Notes under the pieces: model-generated
What the model saw: only the letters and a program-made list of their open reading frames with translations
Databases searched by the model: none
Told to the model about the DNA's origin: nothing
Shown here: in pieces, positions 2,768-64,000 of the stretch
How the letters are laid out: the number at the start of each line of letters is the position of its first letter
Numbering within the stretch: the first letter of the stretch is position 1
Program-made: the position numbers and the translations under genes
Assembly: GCA_002269645.1 (NCBI GenBank)
Contig: NIVC01003027.1
Location: 60,593 to 124,592, forward strand
From: Macrostomum lignano
Taxonomy: Eukaryota
Reading direction: 5' to 3'
Length of the DNA stretch: 64,000 nt

Positions 2768-3399
2768 AGTGGAACCAATTGTGTGGGCCCTGCGGTTTTT
2801 ACTAACAATGAGCTTCGATCAAAAGTAGCACTACTTTCCGGACGTCCCTCGTACTTTTTTTTAAGATGACGCGTATTTCTGCTTTTCTCCATCCAATTAT
2901 TACAGATTCTTAAGAGATGAGAAACTCCCTTGAAATTAGCGCATTGGATTTTATTTGTACTCTTGAATGCTGCGTGATTTTTTAAGGAAAAAACTGCACA
3001 ATTGTCTTTGCTTTTTGAGTTTTATTTTGTTTGTTTGTTTGCGTCCATTTTTTCGTCGCGTTAAGTTGGGACCCAGTCTTGTCTGTTAACCCTCTTTGTA
3101 GGACTCTTTTTGTTTAAAATATATAGTGAGAACCTCTGCAATTTTTTAAGTGTTCGTCTTTTTTTCGCTTTTTAATATTATTTCTATTTTTAAATCCGAT
3201 TTAGCTCCCGTGAGGAGAGTCAAATTGCTAGTCTAATATACTAAGAATTTCGTTTCTACAAATTAAATGAGGAACTATTTTAGTAAATGAAGCATAACAC
3301 AAAGCTAATTTAGCCAAATTATCAATGAGAAAATTTGGTTACCTGAAAATCCCTCAAATATTCCTTAATAAGATTCCCTATTCCCTGAGATCCAATGCC

Positions 3400-3680
3400 C
3401 AGGACTTTATTGGGACTCCCAGAACACTCAGGGCTTCAAGATATCCCATTGGGACTTCCAGAACACTCCAGTGCCTCAAGATATCCCATTGGGATTCCCA
3501 GAACACTCCAGTGCCTCAAGATATCCCATTGGGATTCGCTGAACACTCCAGTGCCTCAAGATATCCCATTGGGATTCCCAGAACACTCAGTGCCTCAAGA
3601 TATCCCATTGGGATTCCCAGAACACTCAGTGCCTCAAGATATCCCATTGGGATTCCCAGAACACTCAGTGCCTCAAGATG
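3400..3680. repeat. 39-40 bp minisatellite (GCCTCAAGATATCCCATTGGGATTCCCAGAACACTCAGT)
   Basis: About 7 tandem copies, sharing CTCAAGA-ATCCC and TGGGAT-CC words with the 334-1529 array. Confidence 0.9.
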
Positions 3681-3734
3681 CCCCGGATTTCGAATATTTA
3701 ATCTTTCTCGCCGTCCCGAACCGCCCGCCGCCAG

Positions 3735-6543
3735 CGCGCAGCCCACCCGCCGTCAAAGTGTCGCTCTCACGCATAATCGAAGACGTGACGACGCGGGCGG
3801 CCGCGGCAGCGGCCGACGCCGCAGCGGCGGCCGGCGGCGGCGATGCGTCCTCGGTGACGCCGCCGAGGCCGGCAAAGCCGCGCAAGCCGGCTGGCACCGG
3901 GCGCCGGTCCCGGCAGGCGCGCCGCGATCCCCAGGAGCCGGTGAATCCCCGGTCGGCCTACACCGTATTCGTCAAAGAGAAGATGGAGCAGCTTGGCGCG
4001 CATATTAAAGACACGCCGGAGCTGAAGCTGAAAGGTCGCGACCAGATTAAAGTGGTAGCGCAGCAGTGGCGCGACCTGTCAGCGGATGAGAAGCAGCGCT
4101 ACCAGCAGCTCTATACCAAAGCGTTCGCCGCCTACGAGCAGGAGTTGTCAGCCTACAAGCAGACTGAAGCGCACCGGGCCTTTCAAGAGAAGCTCAAAGC
4201 GTTGGACGCGCAACGGTCGGCTAGCAATCATCCGTCTACGTCGGCGCCAAGTCCGGCTAAGAGAGCCAAAACTGGTTCCGGCGCTGGCAGCGGCGCGGGA
4301 AGCGGCGCCGGAGCTCGTCCTGGCGGCGCCGCTGCGGCGGGGGCGGCGGCGACTGCGCCGGCCGCTACTGCTGGCGTCCGGAAATCAACTGGGGACGAGT
4401 CGTCCATTCTCAATAATAGCCAAGCGGCCGGGTCTGTTGTTGTCAACCAGCAGCAACCGCAGCAGCAACAGCAACAGTCACTTCAGCAGCAGCTGCTGGT
4501 CCCGACTACAGTGGGCCACCAGCAGCTGCTGGTACCGGCTGGTCAGCAGCAGATGCTACTACCGGCTGGAGCTCAACAACAGGTGCTGGTGCCCGCTAGT
4601 GCTCAACAACAGGTACTGGTGCCCGCTAGCGGTCAGCAACAGGTGCTCGTGCCTGCTAGTCGTCAGCAACAGATGCTGGTGTCTGCCGGAGGTCAGCAGC
4701 AGATGCTAGTGCCCGCTAGTGGTCAGCAACAGGTGTTAGTACCAGCTAGCGGTCAGCAGCAGGTGCTGGTGTCTGCCAGCGGTCAGCAACAGGTGCTGGT
4801 ACCAGCCAGCCAGCTGTCCGGGCTGAATACTGGGCAGCAGCAGTTCCTGGTTCCGGCGGGCGGGCAGCAACAGGTGAGCTCGAAATTCTGTGCTTAATTT
4901 GATATGCTCGGGAGTGAGATTTCCAGTGTGCCAGTCCAGATAGAGTGAGATTTCCAGTGTGCCAGTCCAGATAGAGTGAGATTTCCAGTGTGCCAGTTCA
5001 GATAGAGTGAGATTTCCAGTGTGCCAGTCCAGATAGAGTGAGATTTCCAATGTGCCAGTCCAGATAGAGTGAGATTTCCAATGTGCCAGTCCAGATAGAG
5101 TGAGATTTCCAATGTGCCAGTCCAGATAGAGTGAGATTTCCAATGTGCCGGTCCAGATATAGAGTGAGATTTCCAATGTGCCAGTCCAGATATAGAGTGA
5201 GATTTCCAATGTGCCGGTCCAGATATAGAGTGAGATTTTCAATGTGCCAGTCCAGATATAGAGTGAGATTTCCAATGTGCCGGTCCAGATATAGAGTGAG
5301 ATTTTCAATGTGCCAGTCCAGATATAGAGTGAGATTTCCAATGTGCCAGTCCAGATATAGAGTGAGATTTCCAATGTGCCAGTCCAGATATAGAGTGAGA
5401 TTTCCAATGTGCCGGTCCAGATATAGAGTGAGATTTTCAATGTGCCAGTCCAGATATAGAGTGAGATTTCCAGTGTGCCAGTCCAGATAGAGTGAGATTT
5501 CCAATGTGCCAGTCCAGATAGAGTGAGATTTTCAATGTGCCAGTCCAGATAGAGTGAGATTTCCAATGTGCCGGTCCAGATATAGAGTGAGATTTCCAAT
5601 GTGCCAGTCCAGATATAGAGTGAGATTTCCAATGTGCCGGTCCAGATATAGAGTGAGATTTTCAATGTGCCAGTCCAGATATAGAGTGAGATTTCCAATG
5701 TGCCGGTCCAGATATAGAGTGAGATTTTCAATGTGCCAGTCCAGATATAGAGTGAGATTTCCAATGTGCCAGTCCAGATATAGAGTGAGATTTCCAATGT
5801 GCCAGTCCAGATATAGAGTGAGATTTCCAATGTGCCGGTCCAGATATAGAGTGAGATTTTCAATGTGCCAGTCCAGATATAGAGTGAGATTTCCAATGTG
5901 CCAGTCCAGATATAGAGTGAGATTTCCAATGTGCCGGTCCAGATATAGAGTGAGATTTTCAATGTGCCAGTCCAGATATAGAGTGAGATTTCCAATGTGC
6001 CAGTCCAGATATAGAGTGAGATTTCCAATGTGCCGGTCCAGATATAGAGTGAGATTTTCAATGTGCCAGTCCAGATATAGAGTGAGATTTCCAATGTGCC
6101 AGTCCAGATATAGAGTGAGATTTCCAATGTGCCAGTGAGCTCTTAATTCTGGTCTCTATTGAATCGGTGAATTCGGATTTCAAGCAGTGGCTCTGAGCTC
6201 CATCACCCCCCATATTTGCCAGCAGATGCTGATGGCGGGCGGGCCGGGCGGGCAAGGCCAGCAGCTGCTCATGCCGGCTGGTCAGCAGCTGATGCAGCTC
6301 CAGAATCTGCCTGGCCTGCCGCCTGGCACAGTGGCTCTGCTAGCTGTCACCCAGGGTCCTATGCCCGGCCTCGCTCAGGTGGCCACAGTTGGTGGACAGT
6401 CTCTGTCCAGCTTCCAGGAGCTTGTACAGTCGGCTCAGCCGCAGCAGCAGCAGCAGCAGCAGCAGCCTCAGCAACAGCAGCACATGTCGACGCAGATTCA
6501 GCAACAGCAGCAACAGCAACAGCCTTCTCAACAGCTTCATCAT

Positions 6544-17812: not shown

Positions 17813-18769
17813 GGACTAGCAATCAGCGCCCCCCGCTGGGAAGCAAAAAAAATTGAATTAACTACTCGTCTCGTGTTTTAGTATCCTAACTAAATAAACT
17901 AATGGTTTAAGCAACAAAGCATCTGTCCTGAAAGCCGGCTATCTGGCCCAAGATATCAGCATCCCCTGTGAGCTTTGGCATCAAAGCCTCCATTTGACCC
18001 ATGGCTTAACTTAACCCTCCCTTTGATCGACCAGCAACCGATCTCAGCAACCCCCATGAGCCACAATATTTCAGCAACCACCCTTGACATCTCAGCAATT
18101 CTCCCAGAGTCATAGAATTTCAGCAATCCCCCCGAGCCTCGACATCTCAGCGATTCCACCATGACATGAGCATTGTCATGTCAGCAACTCCACCCGTGAG
18201 CCCTGATATCTCATATCTCAGAAACAAACATATCTGATATACTTGCTAGAAGCTTAAACGTGGTGTCGAGAATTTAATATCTAGTCGAATTCTATTCGTT
18301 AATCGATATATACTGTATAGTCGCGAGAAGGGTTTCAAACACATGGCGCATTGAAATAAAGCATCTTAAAAAATCAAAGCCACTAAAATATTAGCACTGT
18401 TTAGGTCTAATTGCGACTGTAAATTGCTGCAGTGATTTGAAAAAAAATAATATGGTAAAAGACAAATAGCAACGCGAGAAATAAAAATCGCATCGAGAAA
18501 AAGTTTTTTAACCGAGTTCACAAAGTATTGTGTTTAACAAACAAAAACAAATGAATACCTAAGCCTTTACCAAAATTTGCACAGATAATTAATCAGTAGT
18601 AACCAAAATACACTAATAACCGTTACGATTTTGTTATTTCATCATTGTTAGCCAGATTAAGGACCATATCTGAAAGGAAAAATATTTTTTTAAAGTTGAA
18701 AGCAAGGTTTTGTTAGCAAAAAGCTGTTGGAGCTATTTGTCTGGTAAGCTCTATGAAATCGATGTAGCG

Positions 18770-21700
18770 CTAAGCTAGTGCAAGAATCAACAGGTGCAAA
18801 AGGACCAACCTGGGCCCACTGGGAGGCGGAAATCTGCCACCCATAAACGGATCCGTATAAAACGAGGACGGAGGCCGTGGTCCGAAAAATGCAGGATGCA
18901 CCGGCGGTCCCAGGCCTCGACCAGGGATAGGTGGTGGATGCTGCTGGAAGCTCCATTGCTGCGGCTGCATCCGTGGCGCCGGTCTGCGACGTAGCGGCAT
19001 CTCCTGCGGAGCTCCGGGCATGGAGATGAGCATTGAGTCGAGCTTGCAGCCGCACTGCCCGACAGTCAAGCTGGAGTCGCCGCGGCAAAACGCTTCCTCG
19101 AGCTTGTCGTTGAGGCCGGGCTCTGGCAGAATCTCAACGGAGCTCCAGGCGCCGTGGCTGCCAAGGAAGAACCAGAGCCAGTTGGTGGCCAGGGGCCGGT
19201 GGAGGCTGGCGCGGCTCTCCGTGCGGAGGCAGCGGAGGCCGCCGGGAGGCTTCAGGTGTCCCGAGACCGACCGAATCTCGAATCTATCGGCCGAACCGGC
19301 AACGAACGACAGCGTCAGCTGACCGGGGAACTCGGAGCCGAGCTCCCCGCTGCCGACCGTCACTAAGTCGGAGCGGTCGGGCTGGCAGAAGGCCGCCTCC
19401 AGCTGCTCGTTCAGCGCGGCGTCCACGTCCTGCCAGCGGCTCGGCGGCCAGTGGGCGGCCCGCCACTGCCACAGATAAGGGACCTTGTGAGGGCAGTGCC
19501 GCCGAGGACAATTCTGGGAGAAGCATTCGTGCCGGAGGAACTCCTCGCACAGGGTTTCCTCGCTAGGAGCAGCACGAGACGCCTTTGGATTGGCGGCGGC
19601 TGAGGCAACGGACGGCTTTTGCTGAGCTTTTGGGCTGCTGCCGAGTTTCAACTTTGCAATGTTTGGCACACTGCCTGCGGACAGCTTGCTTTGGCGCTTG
19701 CTTTGCAAGTCAGCCTTCTGCTGCTGTTCTGTCGATTGCTGATGACCTCGGAATTGGTGCTTGCCCGACTGGTGCAGCCCAATTGGCGGCCTGTTTGTAC
19801 GAATGCCAGAGCGATCCAATTTAGTTCAAGTGCACATCGTTGAGAGAAAAGGGGTGGCGCCCCAGCCCCAACCAGGCCGATAAACATTTTCCGGCCTCCC
19901 TCCTTACTGCTTTCTCATTGGCTGAGCTAGATTGGGCCTGTCCTCTAGGCTCTTTCCTTACTGCTCTCTCATTGGCTGAGCTAAATTGGCCCTGCCCACT
20001 AAGCTGAGTTTCATTTGTCTAACTGTGACCTCTCTCCTTACTGCTTTCTCATTGGCTGAGCTAGATTGGGCCTGCCCACTAAGCTGAGTTTCGTTTGTCT
20101 AACTGTGACCTCTCTCCTTACTGCTCTCTCATTGGCTGAGCTAGATTGGGCCTGTCCTCTAGGCTCTTTCCTTACTGCTCTCTCATTGGCTGAGCTAAAT
20201 TGGCCCTGCCCACTAAGCTGAGTTTCGTTTGTCTAACTGTGACCTCTCTCCTTACTGCTCTCTCATTGGCTGAGCTAGATTAGGCCTGCCCTCTAGGCTG
20301 AGTTTCGTCTGCCTTGGGTTCACTTGTGTAAATCGAATTAGTTGTCTGTTCATTCTTCACCCCCATATGCTCCAGAGGACGCAAACCCCGAGAAAAGAAA
20401 TTTTAAATGCCACAGTAAACTCTTAATAACACTTCGTCCAGACTAACTCATGTAAAAAGAGTATACGATCTACTTTTTCACAACAAAAATGTAGTGTCAG
20501 CCGTGTTAACTAATTAAGTCTTTCACAATTAGGGAGCCTTTAAAAAAGTTTTTTGAGTCGATCAGAGCGCCAAAACAAAAATGGCAGTTTGAAGGACTGG
20601 TAAAAAACAATCTTACCTAGGACCATGTTGCGGCTGCGGCATAAGCGGCGCAACATTTGACGATTGCTGTGGAGCATTGCTTCTAGGAGGCTGATTAACG
20701 TTAGCAAAAGCAGCGGGTACTGGATTCGAATTGGTGTAAGGCAGCGGGGCGGGAATCAAGAAAGACCTGAGAACGTGACCAGGCTCCATCTCGTCCATGT
20801 CGAAGGGGTTCAGCTTCATCTTGGTCTGCTCATCCATGCTCAGCACGTGCTGCCTGCTGCAGCGGCACTTGCCGCACTGCTTGAACTTGACGTTGTTGCA
20901 CAGGTGAATGTCGGCACAGTCAGCTTGTTGACAGCCGGATTCTGAGTTGTAGGCTGAGCACACCTTCGGGTGGCTGGCCAGCAGCAGGTTGAGCACCTCC
21001 CGCTGTTTCAGGCCGTCTGCGATGCCCAAGGCGCTGCGAATTCGGTGGTTGCGGCCGCTGAGGTCGTGGCAGAGCCTGCAGTCCGCCTGAGGAATGCGGA
21101 TGGGGCATTGGGGCATTTTTAATGAGGGACTTTGAGCTGTGGGATTCTGAGCAGTGGGATTCTGAGCAGTGGGGCTGAGAGCTGTCGGATTCTGAGCAGT
21201 GGGGCTGTGAGCTGTGGGATTCTGAGCAGTGGGGTTCTGAGCTGTGGGGCTGTGAGCTGTGGGATTCTGAGCAGTGGGGCTGTGAGCTGTGAGATTCTGA
21301 GCAGTGGGGCTGTGAGCTGTGGGATTCTGAGCAGTGGGATTTTGAGCAGTGGGGCTGTGGGCTGTGGGATTCTGAGCAGTGGGATTCTGAACTGTGGGAT
21401 TCTGAGCAGTGGGATTCTGAGCTGTGGGGGGATTCTGAGCAGTGGGGCTGTGAGAGTCTGAGCAATGGGGTTCTGAGCTGTGGGGGGATTCTGAGCTGTG
21501 GGATTCTGAGCTGTGGGATTCTGAGCTGTAGGATTCTGAGATGAGTAATTAACTTCAAGTTGCAGACTCAGTTGTGGGATGAGACTGAATGCAGGAAGGG
21601 GATATTGATCAAATCAAATTGCACAATTCAAACGCATCTCCCCACCTTATCATGCACTTTGCCGTCGGGGTCGGCCAGAAACCACAGGCACAGGTGCAGC

Positions 21701-24700
21701 TGGCAGCAGTCCGCATTCTGGCAGGACTTCGGTGCCCCGTTGTGCATCGGGCAGATGCGGAAGCGGCGAAACACATTCACGCTGACCGGCTGTCCGCTCA
21801 CAGCATCCTTGTAGATGTCAATCATGCTCTGCAGCGGCTTCATCAACTCGTCGATGCTGTCCCGCCACTGCTCCAGCGGGAAGCCGCTCGGCAGTTTCAG
21901 GTCGGCCAGCAGCTCCGACGGTGCGGCTCGGCCGCTGCGGCGAATCAGCGCGGCGTAGGCGGTGCGAAGGCCGAGGCCGAGGACCGACACGTCGGGCAGC
22001 GGGGGCGGCAGGCTCGGGGCGGGCGCAGGGGCGGGCGCAGGGGCGGGCGCAGGGGCGGGTCCGGGGACACCGGCCATGGCAGGCAGGGAGTTCCGCAGCG
22101 CAGCGGGCACCAGGAAGGATCTGGCGAGGAAGTTCAGGTTGCTGTCGTCCAGGCCGAACCTGGCCAGCTTGACCGCCGTCTCCGGGTCCTTGGCGGCGGG
22201 CTCCAGGACGTGCCGCCTGTGACACGGGCACAGCTGCTTAGCCAGCTTGTTTTCCCTGTGCAGCGCGTTGTTGCAAATGTGAATGTCGGGGCAGCGGGCA
22301 TCGGAACACCCGCTGTCTGTGTTGTACTTGGCGCACACTGCCGGGTGGCTCGCACGCAGCAGCTCGAGGACCTTCTGGCTGCCGACTGCGCCGAGGCCAA
22401 TGCGGGCAAGCAGCTGCGGGCGGGTGAATGATTAGATGATGGCTGTGATGACGAGTACAACTGGAGCTGCAGGTGACTGATTGGATGATGGCTGTGATGA
22501 CGAGTACAGCTGGAGCTGCAGGTGACTGATTAGATGATGGCTGTGATGACGAGTACAGCTGAAGCTGCAGGTGACTGATTGGATGATGGCTGTGATGACG
22601 AGTACAGCTGAAGCTGCAGGTGACTGATTGGATGATGGCTGTGATGACGAGTACAACTGGAGCTGCAGGTGACTGATTGGATGATGGCTGTAATGACAAG
22701 CAGGTGAATGATTGGATGGCTGTGATGACAAGCAGGTGAATGATTGGATGGCTGTGATGACAAGCAGGTGAATGATTGGATGGCTGTGATGACAAGCAGG
22801 TGAATGATTGGATGGCTGTGATGACAAGCAGGTGAATGATTGGATGGCTGTGATGATGAGCACAGCTGGAGCTGCAGGTGATAGTGGGAAATCGCGATGA
22901 ACAGCAGTTTTTGACAGCATGAAACAGCACAAAACAGCAATTACTGACAGCACAAAACAGCATTATTTACAGCCTAAAACAGCAATCAGCAATCACTAAA
23001 AGCATAAGACAGCAATTGCTCATAGCACATAATAGAATATACTGTGTCACTGACAGCATAAAACAGCATAAAATAGCATTACTGACAGCATAAAACAGCA
23101 CAAAACAGCAATTACTAACAGCATGAAGCAGCACAAAACATCAGTTACTGACAGCACAAAACAGCAATTACTGACAGCATGAAGCAGCACAAAACAGCTA
23201 TTACTGACAGCATGAAGCAGCACAAAACATCAGTTACTGACAGCACAAAACAGCAATTACTGACAGCATGAAGCAGCACAAAACATAAGTTACTGACAGC
23301 ACAAAACAGCAATTACTGACAGCATGAAACAGCACAAAACAGCAACTACTGATAGCACAAAACAGCAATTACTGACAGCACGAAGCAGCACAAAACATCA
23401 GTTACTGACAGCACAAAACAGCAGTTTACAGACCTCCTTATTGCGCGCATCTCCCAGTCCGTGAACCAGACCGCACTGTCCATTGTGCACCCTTCCATCT
23501 GGGTCGCCCAGCCACCACAGACAGAAGTGCAGCCGCTTGCACTTCGGATTCGTGCAGCTGTCCTTGGCGCCATTGTAGAACTGGCAAATTCGAACACAAG
23601 GATAAGCATTGAGCCGCCCCTCACACAGAATGAGCTTCCCGCCTGGCTGATCTGACAGCCACTGATCCAGTGGGAAATTTGATGCCAATGCGAATCTCTT
23701 CAGGAATTCTGGCACCGTGGCGCTGCCGCCTGCAGTCAGCAGGAAGTTCAACACATTGTCCAGCGTCAGCAATGGCGCTGACTGAATGTGCCGAAACACA
23801 TGGTCAAAGTTCAGAGCGTCCTTGTATGGGTACTGCTTCTCTGGCCCAGCCTGTTAGTAAGGAAAACAAAGCTTTCAGTGACTATAGGGAGGCTTTTTAC
23901 TGACTATAGGGGAGCTTTCACTGACTATAGGGGAGCTTTCACTGACTATAGGGGAGCTTTCACTGACTATAGGGGAGCTTTCACTGACTATAGGGGAGCT
24001 TTTACCGAGTATAGGGGAGCTTTGACACAATCGGAAAGCAATCTATTGAATGCATTAGCTAAATGTCAATAGCTTTCATAGTTAAAAATTTGATCAATAT
24101 TTCCTCAAATTCCTTACAATGTTTTTCGGCAAACTCTGTGGCGGTCCTAAATCCTTCAGATATTCCGCCTCTTCAATGTCGATTCCATCTGCCTTTTGAC
24201 CGTCGTCCTCTTCTGTAACATCGACCAACAAATCGTCATCGACAAAGTCGCCATACGAAGCAACGTCCGATTCGTCAGCGTTGTCGTCGTCCAAGTCGCC
24301 GACGCTCGACTGGTTGTCGCCGACGCTGGACGCGGCTGAGGTTAACGACTCGGCTCGGCTGCTAATTCCAGCGTCGCCTGCGGCAGCTGCCTGCTGACTG
24401 CGACAGCGTCTGCAATGACAGGCGCGAGCTCTGCGCAGCTTGGCCTGGTCGTACGGGTCGCTCACCACAACGAATCGCCACGCCACCTGCAGTACACAAT
24501 ACACACATTTCTGTATATTGTGCCAGTTCTCTACACGCGATGGCTACAAGCGAGGAGTGAACCTGCACTCAACACTCCTAGCCGCCTAGCTAGAGGGGGT
24601 GGGTGCACTAAGAATAATAATAATAATAATTGATTACACCTGCCCCAGATAGCAGATGCGCAACCGACAGCACAGCCGCAGCGCATCTGAAGGGTGCGTA

Positions 24701-25507
24701 CGGCTGTTCAGTCCAAGGACTGGGGGGGGGGAGGGGGGTCACCGCACACACCCTCAATTACCCCAGCTAATGCTGGCACCCATTTTACAGCTGGGTGAAC
24801 TGAAGCAATGCATAGTTGAGTGTCTTGCTCAAGGACATAAATAGTTCTAGTGGGATCGGGAATCGAACCCCCGACCTTCAAGTTGTAAGTCCGACGCTCT
24901 AACCACTAGGCTACAACCCCTAAATAGTTGAGAGACTGCGATAACACTTTGACAATTCGATAGAACTGACTATTCTATATTTTAAAATATTTTGAATACA
25001 ATTATAAGCATAACTCGCAAAAAAATTCATACAGACCTGCACATCCACCCAGTCGGCAGGGATATGAATATTGCGCCGCGCAATAGCCTCTCGATCAAGC
25101 CGATGACTCAGTCGGCACTGCGCATCTCGTGGGCATTTCTTTCCTAGTGCAGTTGATGGACAGCAGTGCAAATTGGGACACTTGGCTGGTCCTAGACGAC
25201 ACTTGCCACGCCAATAGTGCGTGCAGGGTCGAACAAATGCTTGCCGAAGGATGTACCTGTGGCGCTGTGCCTCGCACTTTGGTGACAACTTTGGAAAATA
25301 GTGTTTCAATATATTCTCATTATGCATTGTCAGGGTTGAATGCGCCATTTTACAGTTGGACTCGGCTTTGCAATAGCCAGCCAGCCACCTTGAGCATATG
25401 TGGAGACTGCAGCACTGTTTATCCTTGCAAATTGCAGCATTCCTATACATTGAGCACAGTTGTAAACTTTTGGGAAAATGGGTGCCCTGTTGATGCTTAG
25501 GAGGCAT
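18770..25507 (-). CDS. ZAP(ZC3HAV1)/PARP12-like CCCH zinc-finger WWE protein, ~1171 aa; exons 25507-25037, 24486-24118, 23850-23434, 22413-21646, 21086-20617, 19790-18770
   Basis: Six exons join in frame through GT-AG introns (phases 0,0,0,0,2; 3516 nt). Three four-finger CCCH modules, e.g. [34 protein letters not shown] resembling the PARP12/ZAP N-terminal domain. Then ZnF5 ([18 protein letters not shown]), WWE1 (YLWQW...WQDV...EQLEAAFC) and WWE2 (WLWFF...W...KLEEAF...LRRRP). Confidence 0.82.
19900..20310. repeat. ~40-60 bp intronic minisatellite (CTCTCCTTACTGCTCTCTCATTGGCTGAGCTAGATTGGGCCTG)
   Basis: About 7 copies in intron 5 of the ZAP-like gene. Confidence 0.85.
21130..21540. repeat. 15-bp intronic minisatellite (CTGAGCTGTGGGATT)
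   Basis: Tandem copies in intron 4 of the ZAP-like gene. Explains ORFs 20920-21558 and 21132-21461. Confidence 0.9.
22430..23425. repeat. two adjacent intronic minisatellites (~49/34-bp GATGATGGCTGTGATGACGAG... unit at 22430-22880; ~23-32-bp ACAGCACAAAACAGCAATTACTG unit at 22905-23425)
   Basis: Fill intron 3 of the ZAP-like gene. Confidence 0.9.
23877..24020. repeat. 21-bp intronic minisatellite (ACTGACTATAGGGGAGCTTTC)
   Basis: About 6-7 copies in intron 2 of the ZAP-like gene. Confidence 0.9.
24613..24920 (-). mobile_element. tRNA-derived SINE with Deu/Nin-like central domain and (ATT)n tail
   Basis: Minus strand has A box TAGCCTAGTGG and B box GGTTCGATTCC in a tRNA-Val(TAC)-like head. 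Core TGTCCTTGAGCAAGACACT...CACCCAGCTGTAAAATGGGT, then an (ATT)n tail. Confidence 0.85.
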
Positions 25508-59859: not shown

Positions 59860-61047
59860 TTTTTGTTAAACCGTGAAAGCAAAAGTTCTCTTGCTCTTTT
59901 ATCGATATATTTTCTCTCAAGCATTTTGTCCAGGATGTTGACAAATTCTTTTCTATTCTCGTCTTTCATTCCGGTCTTTGCCGCTCCTAGAAGAACAGCT
60001 AACCGCTTGTAGAATTCAGGCATGCCTTTTCCGGAAGAGCTTGGAGGTGATTCGAATGATTGGTCAGAGGAGGAACTGTCATGTGGCGCTTGTCTTTGTT
60101 GAGGTGTGAATACTCTGTCATTGATTCGCTTCATTCGTTCTGGGGAGACTGCTCTAATTGTCGCCAGTATCTGGCGCTGGTTTCTGTACTGGGAAATCTC
60201 ATTTGGCCCTGCTTTTTCAAGCGCTTCTAGTACTTGTTCGGGTGTGATTTGTTGCTGTGGCGGTGGAGGTTGTTGTGGTTGTGTGGTTGTGTTTGTGGTT
60301 GCTGCTGTTGTGGTTGTTGTAGTTGTTGTTGTGTTTTGTTTTGGTTGCTGCTGTTGTTGTGGTTGTTGTCTTATGACCTCTTCTTGATCTGGCAAACCAA
60401 ACCATTGTTTAAAGTATTTGTATTTTCTAAACCTGTTCAAGTCAATCCTGTTTTCATGTAAAACTTTCAAAACACCGTTGTTCTTGAGAATGTCTATATC
60501 CCTCTCTAAAGCGAAGGTAACAAGATCTTTGTAATTTCTTTAATTGCTTTTCGGACGTTTTCTCTGATTTTTAGTCATGTATCAAGTAAACTTTGAGTGT
60601 AGGATTCTTTAGTTTCTGCACCTTTATTGATTGAAATAGTTTCCTTCGTCACTTCAATGTTGTAATCCACCGGTTCCTTGGTAATTTTTTTCGCCAGGCG
60701 CTAATTCCAAAATATATATTTTCCATCACCATTACGGGGCCAAAAAAGTTATCCGTCACTTTCATCTGCACTGGTTGTCCTGGTTGCTGAGCCTGTGGTT
60801 GTTCCGGTGAAGATGGGATTTTACCCAATGTGTTTTGCAACTGGCTCTCTTGAATATCATCAATTGTTTCCTTCACAGTGTCGATGTTTTTCTTCGCTTC
60901 TGTGTATCCAGGTTTGTGAAATTCGGTGGCTGCTTGGACGAATTCATTGTAAGATTGTTGTTCTTTGTTGATTAGTCCGGTAACTCGTTTCTCTGCTTGC
61001 GCCAGCTTTTCTAGTTCAGAGATATGATATGAACTTTTCCGCTTCAT
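59860..61047 (-). CDS. conserved Polinton hypothetical protein with Gln/Thr-rich insert (several frameshifts)
   Basis: N-terminal coiled coil (AATEFHKPG), central NYKDLV...KYKYFK and C-terminal GKGMPEFYKRLAVLLGAAKTG...EFVNILDKML, resembling the L.RL.LL.AS..AGN...E...I.D.L motif of Polinton proteins. Confidence 0.55.
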
Positions 61048-61077
61048 TTCTTATTTTATTTTATTTTTAGTTAAAAA

Positions 61078-62360
61078 ATGAACGACCCACTGACACCAGT
61101 TTTCTACAAATTAACAAGCCTATTTTGAGTGATGATAGCACAATCAAAGCGACTCACAAAGAGTTCCGAGTCACGAAAATCAGAATGAAACTAATCTTGG
61201 TCCTGGTCAAACACTGACGTTTACATACAATGGATGTTCGTCTCTGGTTAGTGTGCACAGTCTTAAGAGCGGCTTCCATATGACATTTCAATTCAAGACA
61301 AAAGGTGGTGCGGATGCGGCTCGTGCTAACGTTGACAAGCATGATGCGGATGTGGCTCTGATCAGTAACTTTTGGGCGTACATGTTCAAGGAGTTTAGTG
61401 TATCGAATGGGAGCACAGAGTTGGAGCGAATCGCCAACTTTGGAATTGTCTATGACGCTCATTGTTTGATCGAGAATCCTGATTTTATTCAGTTGGGAAG
61501 TGGTGCGGGTTTTATTGCAGATGAAAAAGAAGGAGACATCAATGACAGTGGCTATAAAAAGAGGAAGAAGAGATACAACTATGCATTGCAAGGTGCTGAT
61601 GATGCTGCTAAGAACCCGCAGTATCGGTCTGTTGATGTATTTGTACCATTGAGATTCATGAGTGGATTCTGTAATACATTTAATCGACTGACTAGTAACT
61701 TTAGCTACACCTTTAGGATGACTAGAGATGATCGCAGTAGAGTGTTGTGGACTGGGCGGATCACACAAGGATGGAGGTGAAGCTAACCGGAATCGAGCTG
61801 TATTTGGAAGTCATTGAGCCAAAGACTGCACTAAAAGCAGACTATCTTAAGGCAATAGAGAAGGACATTGATGTTGCATACACAGCCTACATGTGTCGAG
61901 ATGAGCGAAACGAAACTAGAACAAACATCTGCATTAAAGAGGGATCATGCAGCAATCCAAGGTATATCATTATTACATATGAGAAACCCAAATAGCATTA
62001 TACGCTACATGCATGGAGACGTGCGGTCCATTCAGCATGAAATCAGTGATAATCTTTACCCTGCACTGCCACAAAATGGAGATTTCAGTCAGAACAAGAT
62101 TAGCAAATTTTACAGCGAGTTAGTCGACTTGGCTGTGAAAGAGAACAATGGAATTGCTATCACTGCTCTTCAATATGGAACTCTATATCCGATGTTTGGA
62201 GCTGATGTGTCTGCCAGACAAATGCCTACTGATAACAGCCCTGTGAATATCGTGACTAACATTGAAGGACTGTCGCAACACCCGTGGACCTGTACATTAT
62301 CTATGCATTTGAGAGGAAGGTGAAGCTTAACATGATCAACAATTCATCCAGTAAAGTTAA
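61078..62360 (+). CDS. double jelly-roll major capsid protein (hexon/PY), frameshifted; end approximate
   Basis: Segments ALISNFWAYMFKEF, VFVPLRFMSGFCNTFNR, VKLTGIELYLEVIEP, NPRYIIIT and YGTLYPMFGADVS occur in the order of Polinton MCP motifs. Confidence 0.88.
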
Positions 62361-62380
62361 ATATTTTTTTATGTGAAAAA

Positions 62381-63232
62381 ATGGAAGCGATTGCTGAAAG
62401 ACTAAATAATGTTTCGCACTCTAAGGAGAGCATTCCTATTACAATAACTGGGCGAATTAATGACTCAAACGGGATATTTGTTCAAAAATTAGAGCAAGCG
62501 ATTCGCTGGATCCAGGCGCTAATTACCATGTCTATCTTAACGACTTCACCGGTTGGTCAAACGTTCCCAATGTGTCGGCAGCAAATAATAAGTTTTATTA
62601 CAAATGGAAAGGTGAAGCAGAACTGTGGTATTCCATGTGAGCACGCAAAGTGTGGATACTCACAATTACTTTCTAGAAAACGTCTTTACTAAAAGAGGCC
62701 ATTTTGAGACACCTGATGAGTAAGCCAGATAAAAAATTGTTCCCTGTCAAACTACCTATGATCTCACTGTAATGAGAGTGGTCATGCAAGTTCACAAAGA
62801 TGCGGAGTTGAGTTTAAAGATGACACTTGGTATAGGGAATTGGATTCGTGAAGAAAGTTTATAAGGCAGAATCCACAGCGCGGACTGTCACTCAAGCGAC
62901 GGGGGCCGTTTAGCATGGCCCGGGAAAGTGTACGCGGTTTGTTCTTAGCACCCAATATAGCAGACATTGTAAAGGGTTTGAATATTCTAATCAGAACTAA
63001 TCTCAGTCTTGATTGGGTATTTAAGGAAAGCGAACGAATATTTTGTGTACAACATCTCCAACTCTGTTGCTGGAGGACAGATGGTGGTAGAGAAACCAAA
63101 TCCAGTGAAAAGAGTTGTATTGAGTAATAAGGAGATTCACGAGATTGTGCTACAGTTTGAGACTGAAGATGGGTAGGTGTTGATTTCAACGGTGAAGAGT
63201 TTGTATTGACGTTGATCATTGAGAGAATGTGA
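62381..63232 (+). CDS. single jelly-roll minor capsid protein (penton/PX), frameshifted
   Basis: Joined frames give IRLDPGANYHVYLNDFTGWSNVPNVSAANNKFYY ... NILIRTNL ... VEKPNPVKRV...IHEIVLQFETEDG.VDFNGEEFVLTLIIERM*. Confidence 0.85.
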
Positions 63233-63442
63233 GAAATCACAATTGCTTAATGATTTCTGCAAAGTTATAGTAGCTGTCGTAATCGTTTAATGATTACTCC
63301 ATACTTATGAAACCAGTGTCTTTGGAGAGCTAGATTAATATTAGGGACATTGATATCAACGTTGGGCCAATATTTTCTCATGTACTCGCTGCATTCAAGT
63401 TTGATTGGTACTTGGATTTGTAATTAGGCTCGTGCCGCTTTG

Positions 63443-64000
63443 TAATAAGAACCTGGAGAGACAACTGGAAACATTTTTTAGAGAAAATTTAATTTTTTTT
63501 CAAAGGTAAGGACCCTGGGTTAGGGGATTTAAAGTTTTAGGGATGTGGTAGCACGTTGCAAATTGAATGTGCGGGAGAAGAATGCAGATTATTTCTGATT
63601 GTTTCTGGTGGATGTTAGTGGATTATGTCAGTGTCAGTGAGTATAACAGGTGTTAGTGGACATCTGTTATGCACTGATTCTGTCAGGGATAATATGGATG
63701 GATTAATACGATTATGTCGAAGTTTTCGGAGCAAGTGCGACCCCTCCACTTTTTCATGATTCTGTCGGGGATAATATGGATGGATTTAGGTGAATTATGG
63801 AGGATGTTTTGTGAGCGAGTGCGACCCCCCTTTTTTTCTGATTCTGTCAGGGATAATATGGATGGATTTAATGGGATTATGTTCGAAGTTTTTGGAGTAA
63901 GTGCGACCCCCCCTTTTTTCTGATTCTGTCAGGGATAATATGGATGGATTTAGGTGGATTATGGAGGACGTGAAAAATTTTGCTCCCAGAAGCCCCCTCA
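63443..64000 (-). repeat. right terminal inverted repeat (truncated by the window edge)
   Basis: Reverse complement of 47948-48499. Confidence 0.95.

What the first reader, a model, noticed from the sequence alone, without database searches (positions are those of the whole stretch)
18770..25507. ZAP/PARP12-like antiviral gene with three tandem four-finger RNA-binding modules
Seen: the spliced ~1171-aa product has module 1 (exon 1) and modules 2 and 3 (exons 3-5). Modules 2 and 3 are each preceded by a helical segment ([11 protein letters not shown]...FPLDQW; [10 protein letters not shown]...FPLEQW). That gives about 12 fingers plus ZnF5-WWE1-WWE2. Established: vertebrate ZAP and PARP12 have one four-CCCH N-terminal domain, in ZAP binding CpG in viral RNA, and ZnF5-WWE binds poly(ADP-ribose). 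Inference: a multivalent RNA sensor built by internal duplication in an invertebrate, about 22 kb from an endogenous DNA virus. I cannot confirm from memory whether this architecture has been described.
Basis: partly seen in the sequence, partly recalled or inferred. Interest (0 to 1): 0.8.

Follow-up and report, generated by a model that had tools for sequence, protein, structure and literature searches.

The report
Flatworm PARP12/ZAP relative, three RNA-binding modules
An intact, transcribed gene of the flatworm Macrostomum lignano encodes a relative of the vertebrate antiviral proteins ZAP and PARP12 with three copies of their zinc-finger RNA-binding domain instead of one; the design is real, but it is common among invertebrates and this gene is already in GenBank as a 'hypothetical protein'.

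Summary
On the minus strand, GT-AG exons join into one open reading frame with three collinear four-finger modules, followed by ZnF5-WWE1-WWE2.

One correction: exon 6 ends at a donor at 18810. A 13-nt seventh exon (18669-18657) closes the frame, giving 1162 aa rather than 1171.

The window is Macrostomum lignano. A collinear copy that is 94-97% identical carries the RNA-seq-derived GenBank protein PAA76514.1 with the same exon joins.

Profiles built only from other species score all three modules at 66-116 bits. The family profiles match the whole ZAP N-terminal domain (E 2.7e-26) and ZAP ZnF5-WWE1-WWE2 (E 7.8e-43). An AlphaFold model of module 2 finds only ZAP structures, though it superposes loosely (TM 0.45).

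There is no PARP catalytic domain. The four ZAP CpG-contact residues are not kept, so CpG sensing and an antiviral role are not shown.

The architecture is not unique. 30 of 148 related protein clusters have three or more modules. A nemertean protein has the identical layout, and a coral protein has three modules plus PARP.

The neighbouring 16-kb Maverick/Polinton-like element shows no link to the gene.

Verdict: a real gene and a new variant of a known kind, of moderate interest.

The parts
25037..25507 (-). Coding exon 1 (aa 1-157): start codon and module 1
   Evidence: The ATG at 25507 is the first in-frame ATG after a stop. The donor is CAG|GTCTGT. PAA76514.1 has the same start and join.
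24118..24486 (-). Coding exon 2 (aa 158-280): Ser/Asp/Glu-rich acidic linker, probably disordered
   Evidence: AG/GT borders, phase 0. Present in PAA76514.1. No Pfam domain.
23434..23850 (-). Coding exon 3 (aa 281-419): helical segment and fingers 1-2 of module 2
21646..22413 (-). Coding exon 4 (aa 420-675): fingers 3-4 of module 2, Pro-Ala repeat linker, helical segment and finger 1 of module 3
   Evidence: The Pro-Ala repeat length differs between the two genomic copies.
20617..21086 (-). Coding exon 5 (aa 676-831): rest of module 3 and start of the Pro/Gln-rich linker
   Evidence: The other copy has an extra in-frame 252 bp here.
18810..19790 (-). Coding exon 6 (aa 832-1158): linker, ZnF5-WWE1-WWE2 and Pro-rich tail.
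18657..18669 (-). Coding exon 7 (13 nt: last base of the Arg codon, then Tyr-Gly-Pro-stop), after a 140-nt intron with a polypyrimidine tract and AG
   Evidence: A pattern search found one site. It gives the same C-terminus as PAA76514.1, and the homologous L002 block translates exactly.
25085..25474 (-). Module 1 (aa 12-141): four-finger core only, with no preceding helical segment. All 16 ligand positions are canonical.
   Evidence: 66 bits against a profile built from other species. Pfam zf-CCCH_PARP12 at 28.4 bits against a cut-off of 27. Ligand table.
22144..23763 (-). Module 2 (aa 310-509, interrupted by intron 3): winged-helix-like segment plus four fingers, equivalent to a complete ZAP N-terminal domain
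   Evidence: 116 bits. AlphaFold pLDDT 81 with H-E-H-H-E-E then the finger region. Foldseek finds only ZAP N-terminal domain entries.
20766..21972 (-). Module 3 (aa ~567-782, interrupted by intron 4): helical segment plus four fingers; paralogue of module 2
   Evidence: 116 bits. 44% identity and 114 bits to the module 2 core. 100% bootstrap with module 2.
18974..19564 (-). ZnF5-WWE1-WWE2 central domain (aa 908-1104)
   Evidence: The family profile A3 matches ZAP ZnF5-WWE1-WWE2 (7kzh, E 7.8e-43) over its full length. Alignment. Pfam WWE.

Best explanation
What it is. This is an intact, expressed Macrostomum lignano gene of seven coding exons (18657-25507, minus strand, 1162 aa). It encodes a PARP12/ZAP-family protein that has no ADP-ribosyltransferase domain.

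Layout. It carries three tandem copies of the ZAP-type N-terminal domain. Module 1 is the four-finger core alone. Modules 2 and 3 each have a winged-helix-like segment plus four CCCH-type fingers. The modules are separated by disordered acidic and Pro/Gln-rich linkers. The ZnF5-WWE1-WWE2 domain follows.

Shown here: the anatomy, the homology, the single-transcript organisation in the sister copy, and the same layout in a nemertean.

Inferred mechanism. The three modules bind single-stranded RNA side by side, so that affinity and selectivity come from avidity for long or repeated sites. ZnF5-WWE docks the complex onto ADP-ribose marks or partner proteins made by other enzymes. The protein would then act as a scaffold that hands bound RNA to repression or decay machinery, as the short ZAP isoform does.

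Likelihoods. RNA binding, about 0.6. Targets being non-self RNA (virus or transposon) rather than the worm's own mRNAs, about 0.35. Human-ZAP-style CpG specificity is not expected.
For: Gene model.

Organism and deposited model: the protein is 97.7% identical to PAA76514.1 (BOX15_Mlig005624g2). The PAA76514.1 locus L002 is collinear with the window at 94-97% identity through gene and flanks. Its exon blocks translate exactly to the deposited protein. That annotation was built from an RNA-seq genome-guided transcriptome (PMC5730564).

Integrity: both copies keep open frames and splice sites. dN/dS is 0.44, from 18 synonymous and 26 non-synonymous differences.

Module homology.

Link to ZAP N-terminal domain: the four-finger profile against the PDB gives 6uei at E 7.6e-24. 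The full-module profile gives 6l1w at E 2.7e-26, covering ZAP residues 12-208. AlphaFold pLDDT is 81. Foldseek's only significant hits are five ZAP N-terminal domain entries with probability 1.0.

Central domain: 7kzh at E 7.8e-43.

No PARP domain: tblastn of the window finds none, and none is in PAA76514.1.

Same layout in Tubulanus polymorphus XP_074654097: core-only module 1, two full modules, ZnF5-WWE, no PARP.
Against: No functional data exist for this protein or any invertebrate relative.

Fold match is loose. The global superposition on ZAP has TM 0.45 and rmsd about 10 A, so local fold and topology match but the domain arrangement is not shown to be the same.

Weak single-sequence signal. 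Single window modules do not find ZAP in the PDB by sequence. Pfam barely sees the full protein; WWE scores 20.8 against a cut-off of 21.1 in PAA76514.1.

Finger 2, the CpG-binding finger in ZAP, lacks its second Cys in modules 2 and 3.

The ZAP CpG contacts are not kept, and human PARP12 gave no detectable RNA crosslinks (PMC8102003).

In WWE2 the family motif M-x-Q-x-N reads M-L-I-S-M, so ADP-ribose binding may be weakened or lost.

dN/dS rests on only 44 differences, and module 3 alone gives 1.15.
Confidence: 0.65

Rival explanations
1. It works like tetrapod ZAP: a sensor that picks out CpG-rich viral RNA against a CpG-poor host transcriptome, made stronger by three CpG-binding domains.
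For: Each module is homologous to the complete ZAP RNA-binding domain. The window is moderately CpG-depleted, with CpG observed/expected 0.69.
Against: Mapped through the invariant ligands, the four CpG contacts named in PMC8102003 become S/L/L for K89, K/G/R for K107 and M/L/L for Y108. There is no aromatic residue in the loop that holds Y98.

Finger 2 is non-canonical in modules 2 and 3.

The gene's own coding sequence has CpG observed/expected 0.89, so the contrast with host RNA is small.

The literature places the ZAP-type domain at the lungfish/tetrapod ancestor (PMC12204182) and found no PARP12 activity on CpG-rich targets (PMC8102003).
Confidence: 0.1
2. It is a regulator of the worm's own mRNAs (storage, localisation, translation or decay, for example in germline or stem cells) with no role in defence.
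For: CCCH tandem fingers are common in mRNA regulators; CPSF4, MBNL and TTP are the next-best PDB matches of the finger profile. The same layout is conserved between a flatworm and a nemertean, with moderate constraint. This fits a conserved cellular role at least as well as an arms-race gene.
Against: The only characterised relatives with this whole domain set, ZAP and PARP12, act in antiviral or stress responses. Modules 2 and 3 group within each species, and copy number varies widely across taxa. That pattern is more typical of fast-turning-over defence genes.
Confidence: 0.2
3. The three-module protein is an artefact: neighbouring genes wrongly joined, or a decaying pseudogene.
For: Introns are full of minisatellites that create long spurious ORFs. 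Older predictions split the gene into P0001 (783 aa) and P0002 (581 aa). The flatworm makes polycistronic precursors that are cut by trans-splicing (PMC5730564).
Against: All junctions are GT-AG and in frame. The RNA-seq-derived GenBank model of the sister copy joins all the modules. Both copies are open. A nemertean RefSeq gene has the same order of parts. Short intron-free contigs from other organisms carry module 1, the linker and the start of module 2 in one ORF: P0045 is 390 aa on a 1509-bp contig.
Confidence: 0.03
4. The gene is functionally tied to the Maverick/Polinton-like element 22.5 kb away, for instance as a guard against it.
For: Proximity only.
Against: More than half of this genome is repeats (PMC5730564), so such neighbours are expected by chance. 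The fetched part of the sister locus shows only an EF-hand gene and one small gene as neighbours. The nemertean orthologue shows that the gene is far older than an insertion whose terminal repeats are still 99% alike.
Confidence: 0.02

Closest known systems
Macrostomum lignano PAA76514.1 (BOX15_Mlig005624g2, 'hypothetical protein', 1158 aa; contig NIVC01000815.1 of GCA_002269645.1)
   Same: It is the same gene in a duplicated or allelic copy. The protein is 97.7% identical, with the same exon joins and the same C-terminus. The locus is collinear at 94-97%.
   Different: There are 26 substitutions and a shorter Pro-Ala repeat. That locus also holds an extra in-frame 252 bp after module 3 that the window lacks. 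It carries no functional name. UniProt's automatic name for the related fragment A0A1I8GJV8 is 'PARP12'.
Tubulanus polymorphus (Nemertea) LOC141908132, XP_074654097 and isoforms, 'uncharacterized protein'
   Same: The architecture is identical: core-only module 1 at the N-terminus, two full modules, ZnF5-WWE and no PARP domain. Its module 1 groups with the window's module 1 at 99% bootstrap.
   Different: Only about 30-35% identical. Its modules 2 and 3 group with each other, not with the flatworm's (91.5% and 100% bootstrap).
Tetrapod ZAP (ZC3HAV1/PARP13), short isoform
   Same: It has the N-terminal winged-helix-like segment plus four CCCH fingers, ZnF5-WWE1-WWE2 and no PARP domain in the short isoform. 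Profile matches cover ZAP residues 12-208 and the full central domain.
   Different: ZAP has one N-terminal domain, not three. The CpG-contact residues are not kept here. Fingers 2 of modules 2 and 3 are non-canonical. There is no CaaX end. By the literature, ZAP arose in the lungfish/tetrapod lineage (PMC12204182), so this is not an orthologue.
PARP12
   Same: It is the family from which ZAP arose and has relatives in cnidarians and molluscs (PMC8102003). Pfam zf-CCCH_PARP12 matches module 1.
   Different: PARP12 has one N-terminal domain and an active PARP catalytic domain. Here there are three N-terminal domains and no catalytic domain.
Montipora 'zinc finger CCCH-type antiviral protein 1-like' (XP_068694759); Branchiostoma and Pomacea PARP12-like proteins
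   Same: These carry tandem complete ZAP-type modules: three in the coral, two in amphioxus and the snail.
   Different: The coral and amphioxus proteins keep the PARP catalytic domain.

Membership tests
PARP12/ZAP family (CCCH-finger, WWE-containing PARP relatives) | N-terminal domain of four CCCH fingers homologous to the ZAP RNA-binding domain | tested here: met
   The family profile matches ZAP N-terminal domain structures at E 7.6e-24 and 2.7e-26. The three window modules score 66-116 bits against profiles made without them. Foldseek finds ZAP only, though at TM 0.45.
PARP12/ZAP family (CCCH-finger, WWE-containing PARP relatives) | Helical (winged-helix-like) segment before the fingers | tested here: met
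   Met for modules 2 and 3: the profile aligns to ZAP from residue 12, and the model shows H-E-H-H-E-E. Not met for module 1, which starts at finger 1. Pfam itself gave no HTH-type hit.
PARP12/ZAP family (CCCH-finger, WWE-containing PARP relatives) | Fifth CCCH finger followed by two WWE domains | tested here: met
   Profile A3 matches 7kzh and 7sz2 (ZAP ZnF5-WWE1-WWE2) at E 7.8e-43 over the full length. Pfam WWE is above its cut-off on the exon 6 product.
PARP12/ZAP family (CCCH-finger, WWE-containing PARP relatives) | C-terminal PARP (ADP-ribosyltransferase) fold | tested here: not met
   tblastn with an amphioxus catalytic domain finds nothing in the window. There is no PARP hit in PAA76514.1, and the reading frame ends 58 residues after WWE2. 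The short ZAP isoform, and family members from 'a few species' (PMC8102003), also lack it. So this makes the protein a PARP-less member rather than excluding it.
ZAP in the strict sense (CpG-specific antiviral sensor of tetrapods) | CpG-binding pocket residues K89, Y98, K107, Y108 in finger 2 | tested here: not met
   Mapped through the invariant ligands: module 1 has S, none, K, M; module 2 has L, none, G, L; module 3 has L, none, R, L. The mapping assumes that the PDB chain index is the residue number plus 2, which puts K, Y, K and Y exactly at the four named positions.
ZAP in the strict sense (CpG-specific antiviral sensor of tetrapods) | Orthology to the tetrapod/lungfish ZAP clade; dependence on TRIM25/KHNYN; CaaX membrane anchor in the long isoform | not testable with these tools
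   The literature places ZAP's origin in the lungfish/tetrapod ancestor (PMC12204182). A flatworm gene can only be a relative of the PARP12-like ancestor. The protein ends ...RYGP, with no CaaX. Cofactors were not examined.
WWE domains that bind ADP-ribose | Intact ligand pocket in WWE2, centred on W611 of human ZAP (PMC9720839) | tested here: inconclusive
   ZAP's W-I-W-Y-W strand reads W-L-W-F-F in the window, so two Trp are kept and the third is Phe. The family motif M-x-Q-x-N reads M-L-I-S-M. Which Trp is W611 could not be fixed from the tool output.

The most novel reading that the evidence does not exclude
Tandem arrays of complete ZAP-type RNA-binding domains may be an old, conserved design of invertebrate PARP12/ZAP relatives. 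The same three-module, PARP-less protein occurs in a flatworm and a nemertean. Proteins with two to five modules occur in corals, snails and amphioxus. On this reading the one-domain vertebrate proteins are the reduced form, and the arrays work as multivalent readers of long or repetitive foreign RNA. I found no paper describing this architecture.
Probability: 0.2. Interest if true: 0.7.

Novelty: new variant of a known kind. Interest (0 to 1): 0.45.

Why it matters
ZAP and PARP12 are studied almost only in vertebrates, where each has one RNA-binding domain. Published surveys of invertebrates looked for that 'five fingers plus WWE' layout (PMC8102003).

The analysis here shows that many invertebrate relatives carry two to five complete domains in a row. 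One exact layout (three modules, ZnF5-WWE, no PARP) is shared by two spiralian phyla.

If the modules bind RNA, this is a natural experiment in how valency sets target choice in an innate-immune RNA reader. It would also change the picture of the ancestral protein.

For this genome the practical gain is a name and a corrected seven-exon model for a 'hypothetical protein' that standard domain searches hardly recognise.

Tried and rejected
Searches that failed or found little:
- Two word-index homology searches, with the full protein and with module 2, timed out.
- A third search, with exon 3 alone, found nothing at E <= 0.001.
- The one metagenome scan gave a single weak locus, L001, which I did not pursue.
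- Sequence searches of single window pieces against the PDB found no ZAP. The best hit was CPSF4 at E 0.008, and the C-terminal part found nothing.
- The single-sequence AlphaFold model of module 2 was useless, with pLDDT 40.
- Pfam found no helix-turn-helix family for the helical segments.
- No paper mentions the locus tags or a multi-module ZAP/PARP12. That library lacks most subscription journals.

Readings I considered and rejected:
- A PARP catalytic exon downstream in the window: tblastn finds none.
- The divergent linker and tail of P0002/PAA55276.1 as alternative exons of this locus: they are absent from the window and belong to another copy.
- The hydrophobic end ...[12 protein letters not shown] of the six-exon model as a membrane anchor: it is intron read-through.
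- A common 'module 1' clade across all phyla: only 1.5% bootstrap.
- The tRNA hit in intron 1 as a gene: ARAGORN does not call it.
Full report
1. What is in the sequence

The minus strand between 25507 and 18657 holds a chain of open reading frame segments. They are separated by introns full of minisatellites with units of 15, 21, 33, 49 and 80 nt. Those repeats produce many long spurious ORFs on both strands.

Every acceptor is AG and every donor is GT. The phases are 0,0,0,0,2 and the product is 1171 aa.

The 3' end needs a correction. The deposited relative ends ...SGPRYGP, whereas the six-exon model ends ...[16 protein letters not shown]. The window has a donor, CAG|GTTGGT, exactly at that point. 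A pattern search found a single site 140 nt downstream with a polypyrimidine tract, AG, and then A-TAT-GGT-CCT-TAA. With this seventh exon (18669-18657) the protein has 1162 aa and the same C-terminus as the deposited protein. The hydrophobic tail of the six-exon model is therefore intron read-through.

2. Whose gene it is, and whether it is real

An exhaustive HMMER search of 1.84 billion representative proteins found 284 relatives at E <= 0.001. The two best are Macrostomum lignano predictions. The cluster of the first also holds PAA76514.1, BOX15_Mlig005624g2, a 'hypothetical protein' of 1158 aa.

PAA76514.1 is 97.7% identical to the window's product and has the same exon joins. Its locus is L002, on contig NIVC01000815.1 of assembly GCA_002269645.1. 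L002 is collinear with the window at 94-97% identity through the gene and both flanks. The homologous exon blocks of L002 translate exactly to PAA76514.1.

The GenBank annotation of that assembly was derived from a genome-guided RNA-seq transcriptome (StringTie/TACO, TBONE, TransDecoder). The sequenced line also carries large duplicated blocks that are at least 95% identical (PMC5730564). So the window is an allelic or duplicated copy of a gene whose single mRNA joins all three modules and the WWE region.

Both copies keep all splice sites and an open frame. They differ by 18 synonymous and 26 non-synonymous changes, giving dN/dS 0.44. That is too few changes to say more than 'not decaying'.

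Two further points:
- The 'g2' in the locus tag means the second gene of a transcriptional unit. An AG 28 nt upstream of the ATG could be the trans-splice acceptor. This is inference.
- The older, shorter predictions P0001 and P0002 explain why the architecture is easy to miss. So does the fact that Pfam hardly recognises the full protein; WWE scores 20.8 bits against a cut-off of 21.1.

3. The modules

Modules 2 and 3 are plain paralogues: 38% identity over 244 aa, E 7e-46. Module 1 aligns weakly but in the same register.

To avoid circularity I built profiles from the modules of other species only.
- The four-finger profile scores module 1 (aa 12-141) at 66 bits, module 2 (aa 364-509) at 95 bits and module 3 (aa 632-782) at 96 bits.
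- The longer profile includes the preceding helical segment. It scores modules 2 and 3 at 116 bits each, starting at aa 310 and 578.
- Module 1 matches that longer profile only from position 79, so it has no helical segment.

Sixteen Cys/His columns are conserved in 94-100% of the other species' modules. The window keeps 45 of the 48 positions. The exceptions are:
- the second Cys of finger 2 in modules 2 and 3, which is Val with a His next to it;
- the second Cys of finger 4 in module 2, which is Asn with another Cys seven residues further on.

The intron inside module 2 lies between fingers 2 and 3. The one inside module 3 lies within finger 2. So the copies do not share intron positions.

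4. Relation to ZAP and PARP12

Single window modules do not find ZAP in the PDB by sequence. The family profiles do.
- The four-finger profile matches human, mouse and rat ZAP N-terminal domains (6uei E 7.6e-24) in one collinear stretch over ZAP residues 73-207.
- The full-module profile matches ZAP residues 12-208 of 228 (6l1w E 2.7e-26).

Each full module therefore equals a whole ZAP RNA-binding domain, helical part included.

An AlphaFold model of module 2 built with that alignment is confident: mean pLDDT 81, pTM 0.61. It shows helix-strand-helix-helix-strand-strand before the finger region. Foldseek against the PDB returns five significant hits, all ZAP N-terminal domains (E 7e-7 to 7e-6, probability 1.0, about 200 aligned columns). 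Nothing else scores below E 0.4. A model without zinc and with flexible subdomains may account for the gap, but that is not shown.

The C-terminal profile matches the ZAP ZnF5-WWE1-WWE2 structures over their full length (7kzh E 7.8e-43, 7sz2 E 3.4e-39).

There is no PARP catalytic domain in the protein or anywhere in the window.

5. What the sequence says about function

PMC8102003 names K89, Y98, K107 and Y108 as the key CpG contacts of human ZAP. In the alignment these fall right after the first Cys, in the loop after the second Cys, and right after the third Cys of finger 2. This assumes chain index = residue number + 2, which places K, Y, K and Y exactly at those positions.

The window modules have the following at those positions:

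| ZAP contact | Module 1 | Module 2 | Module 3 |
|---|---|---|---|
| K89 | S | L | L |
| Y98 | no aromatic residue in the loop | no aromatic residue in the loop | no aromatic residue in the loop |
| K107 | K | G | R |
| Y108 | M | L | L |

A human-type CpG pocket is therefore not predicted.

CpG observed/expected is 0.69 in the window and 0.89 in the gene's own coding sequence, which gives little contrast to exploit. The same paper reports no detectable RNA crosslinking for human PARP12. So even RNA binding is an inference from ZAP.

In WWE2, the ADP-ribose pocket of ZAP is centred on W611 (PMC9720839). The window keeps two of the three Trp of the W-x-W-x-W strand and has Phe for the third. 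The family motif M-x-Q-x-N reads M-L-I-S-M. ADP-ribose binding is therefore open.

My best reading is a catalytically silent scaffold. Three RNA-binding domains on flexible linkers would give avidity for long or repeated single-stranded sites. The ZnF5-WWE unit would connect to partners. Whether the targets are foreign or the worm's own RNAs is not decided by any evidence here.

6. How unusual the architecture is

Of the 148 best representative clusters outside Macrostomum, the numbers with full modules (at least 75% of the four-finger profile) are:

| Full modules | Clusters |
|---|---|
| 2 | 33 |
| 3 | 24 |
| 4 | 5 |
| 5 | 1 |

So 30 clusters have three or more. Several of the multi-module proteins also carry ZnF5-WWE and a PARP domain. 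The list is biased, because a three-module query favours multi-module hits, and many entries are fragments.

Named examples:
- Montipora 'zinc finger CCCH-type antiviral protein 1-like', with three modules, WWE and PARP;
- Branchiostoma PARP12-like proteins, with two modules, WWE and PARP;
- a Pomacea PARP12-like protein, with two modules;
- Tubulanus polymorphus LOC141908132.

Some multi-module proteins sit on 5.8-6.7-kb contigs that they almost fill. That is what transcripts look like.

The nemertean protein has exactly the window's layout: core-only module 1 at aa 14-152, full modules at 269-470 and 492-698, ZnF5-WWE at 786-976, and no PARP.

In a neighbour-joining tree of the modules of six proteins:
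- flatworm module 1 groups with nemertean module 1 (99% of 200 bootstraps);
- modules 2 and 3 group within each species (100% and 91.5%).

So module 1 is old and positionally conserved. The module 2/3 pair was either duplicated independently in each lineage or homogenised by gene conversion. I cannot tell which. A single module-1 clade across all phyla is not supported (1.5%).

I found no paper that describes multi-module ZAP/PARP12 relatives. [quoted passage not shown] The searchable library is incomplete, so this is absence of evidence only.

7. The neighbourhood

From about 47965 to 63982 lies a 16-kb element with terminal inverted repeats; the best pair is 158 nt at 99%. It has ORFs for an rve-type integrase, a protein-primed B-family DNA polymerase and an A32-like packaging ATPase. 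That gene set is the one known for Maverick/Polinton elements (my own knowledge of the family; no database comparison to a named Maverick was run).

Nothing links the two. The genome is more than half repeats (PMC5730564), and the gene is far older than the insertion.

8. Verdict

The family assignment and the internal repetition are supported. 'Antiviral CpG sensor' is not.

The gene is already deposited but unnamed, and the architecture is widespread though apparently undescribed. I rate it a new variant of a known kind with moderate interest.

Noticed in passing
window 47965-63982: A 16-kb Maverick/Polinton-like element. Its terminal inverted repeats are built of sub-repeats (arms about 47965-48500 and 63440-63982; best pair 158 nt, 99% complementary). 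The integrase ORF (50847-51884, +) and the A32-like ATPase ORF (58390-59409, -) are uninterrupted. The protein-primed polymerase region (about 53.7-56.3 kb, +) is spread over three reading-frame pieces. That would mean two frame changes if the downstream pieces belong to it, or else introns; I did not verify this. Pfam recognised no capsid or protease gene.
   Followed up: partly
window 24851-24920 (-), inside intron 1: A tRNA-like sequence scores 37.8 bits against Rfam tRNA (cut-off 29). ARAGORN does not call it. It is probably a tRNA-derived repeat or relic.
   Followed up: partly
L002 15595-15846 versus window about 20750: The sister copy holds an extra in-frame 252 bp (84 codons) in the linker after module 3. 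It is flanked by a repeated stretch coding PLPNTN, and the window lacks it. The deposited protein PAA76514.1 leaves it out, whereas the paralogue PAA55276.1 keeps a similar segment. The linker therefore varies between copies and possibly between isoforms.
   Followed up: partly
window 19895-20308, 21126-21540, 22423-23423, 23870-24023 (introns 2-5): Dense minisatellites with units of 15, 21, 33, 49 and 80-214 nt fill the introns and create ORFs of up to 241 aa on both strands. Intron 3 is 1020 nt here and 1770 nt in the sister copy.
   Followed up: no
window 3395-4897 (+): A 500-aa ORF with an HMG box (Pfam E 7.8e-9) inside a Gln-rich, low-complexity region. It is probably an exon of a neighbouring gene.
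   Followed up: no
P0023 / XP_074654097 (Tubulanus polymorphus) and the module tree: Flatworm and nemertean proteins share the whole layout, yet modules 2 and 3 group within each species. This could be independent duplication or gene conversion between the modules. It is unexplained.
   Followed up: partly
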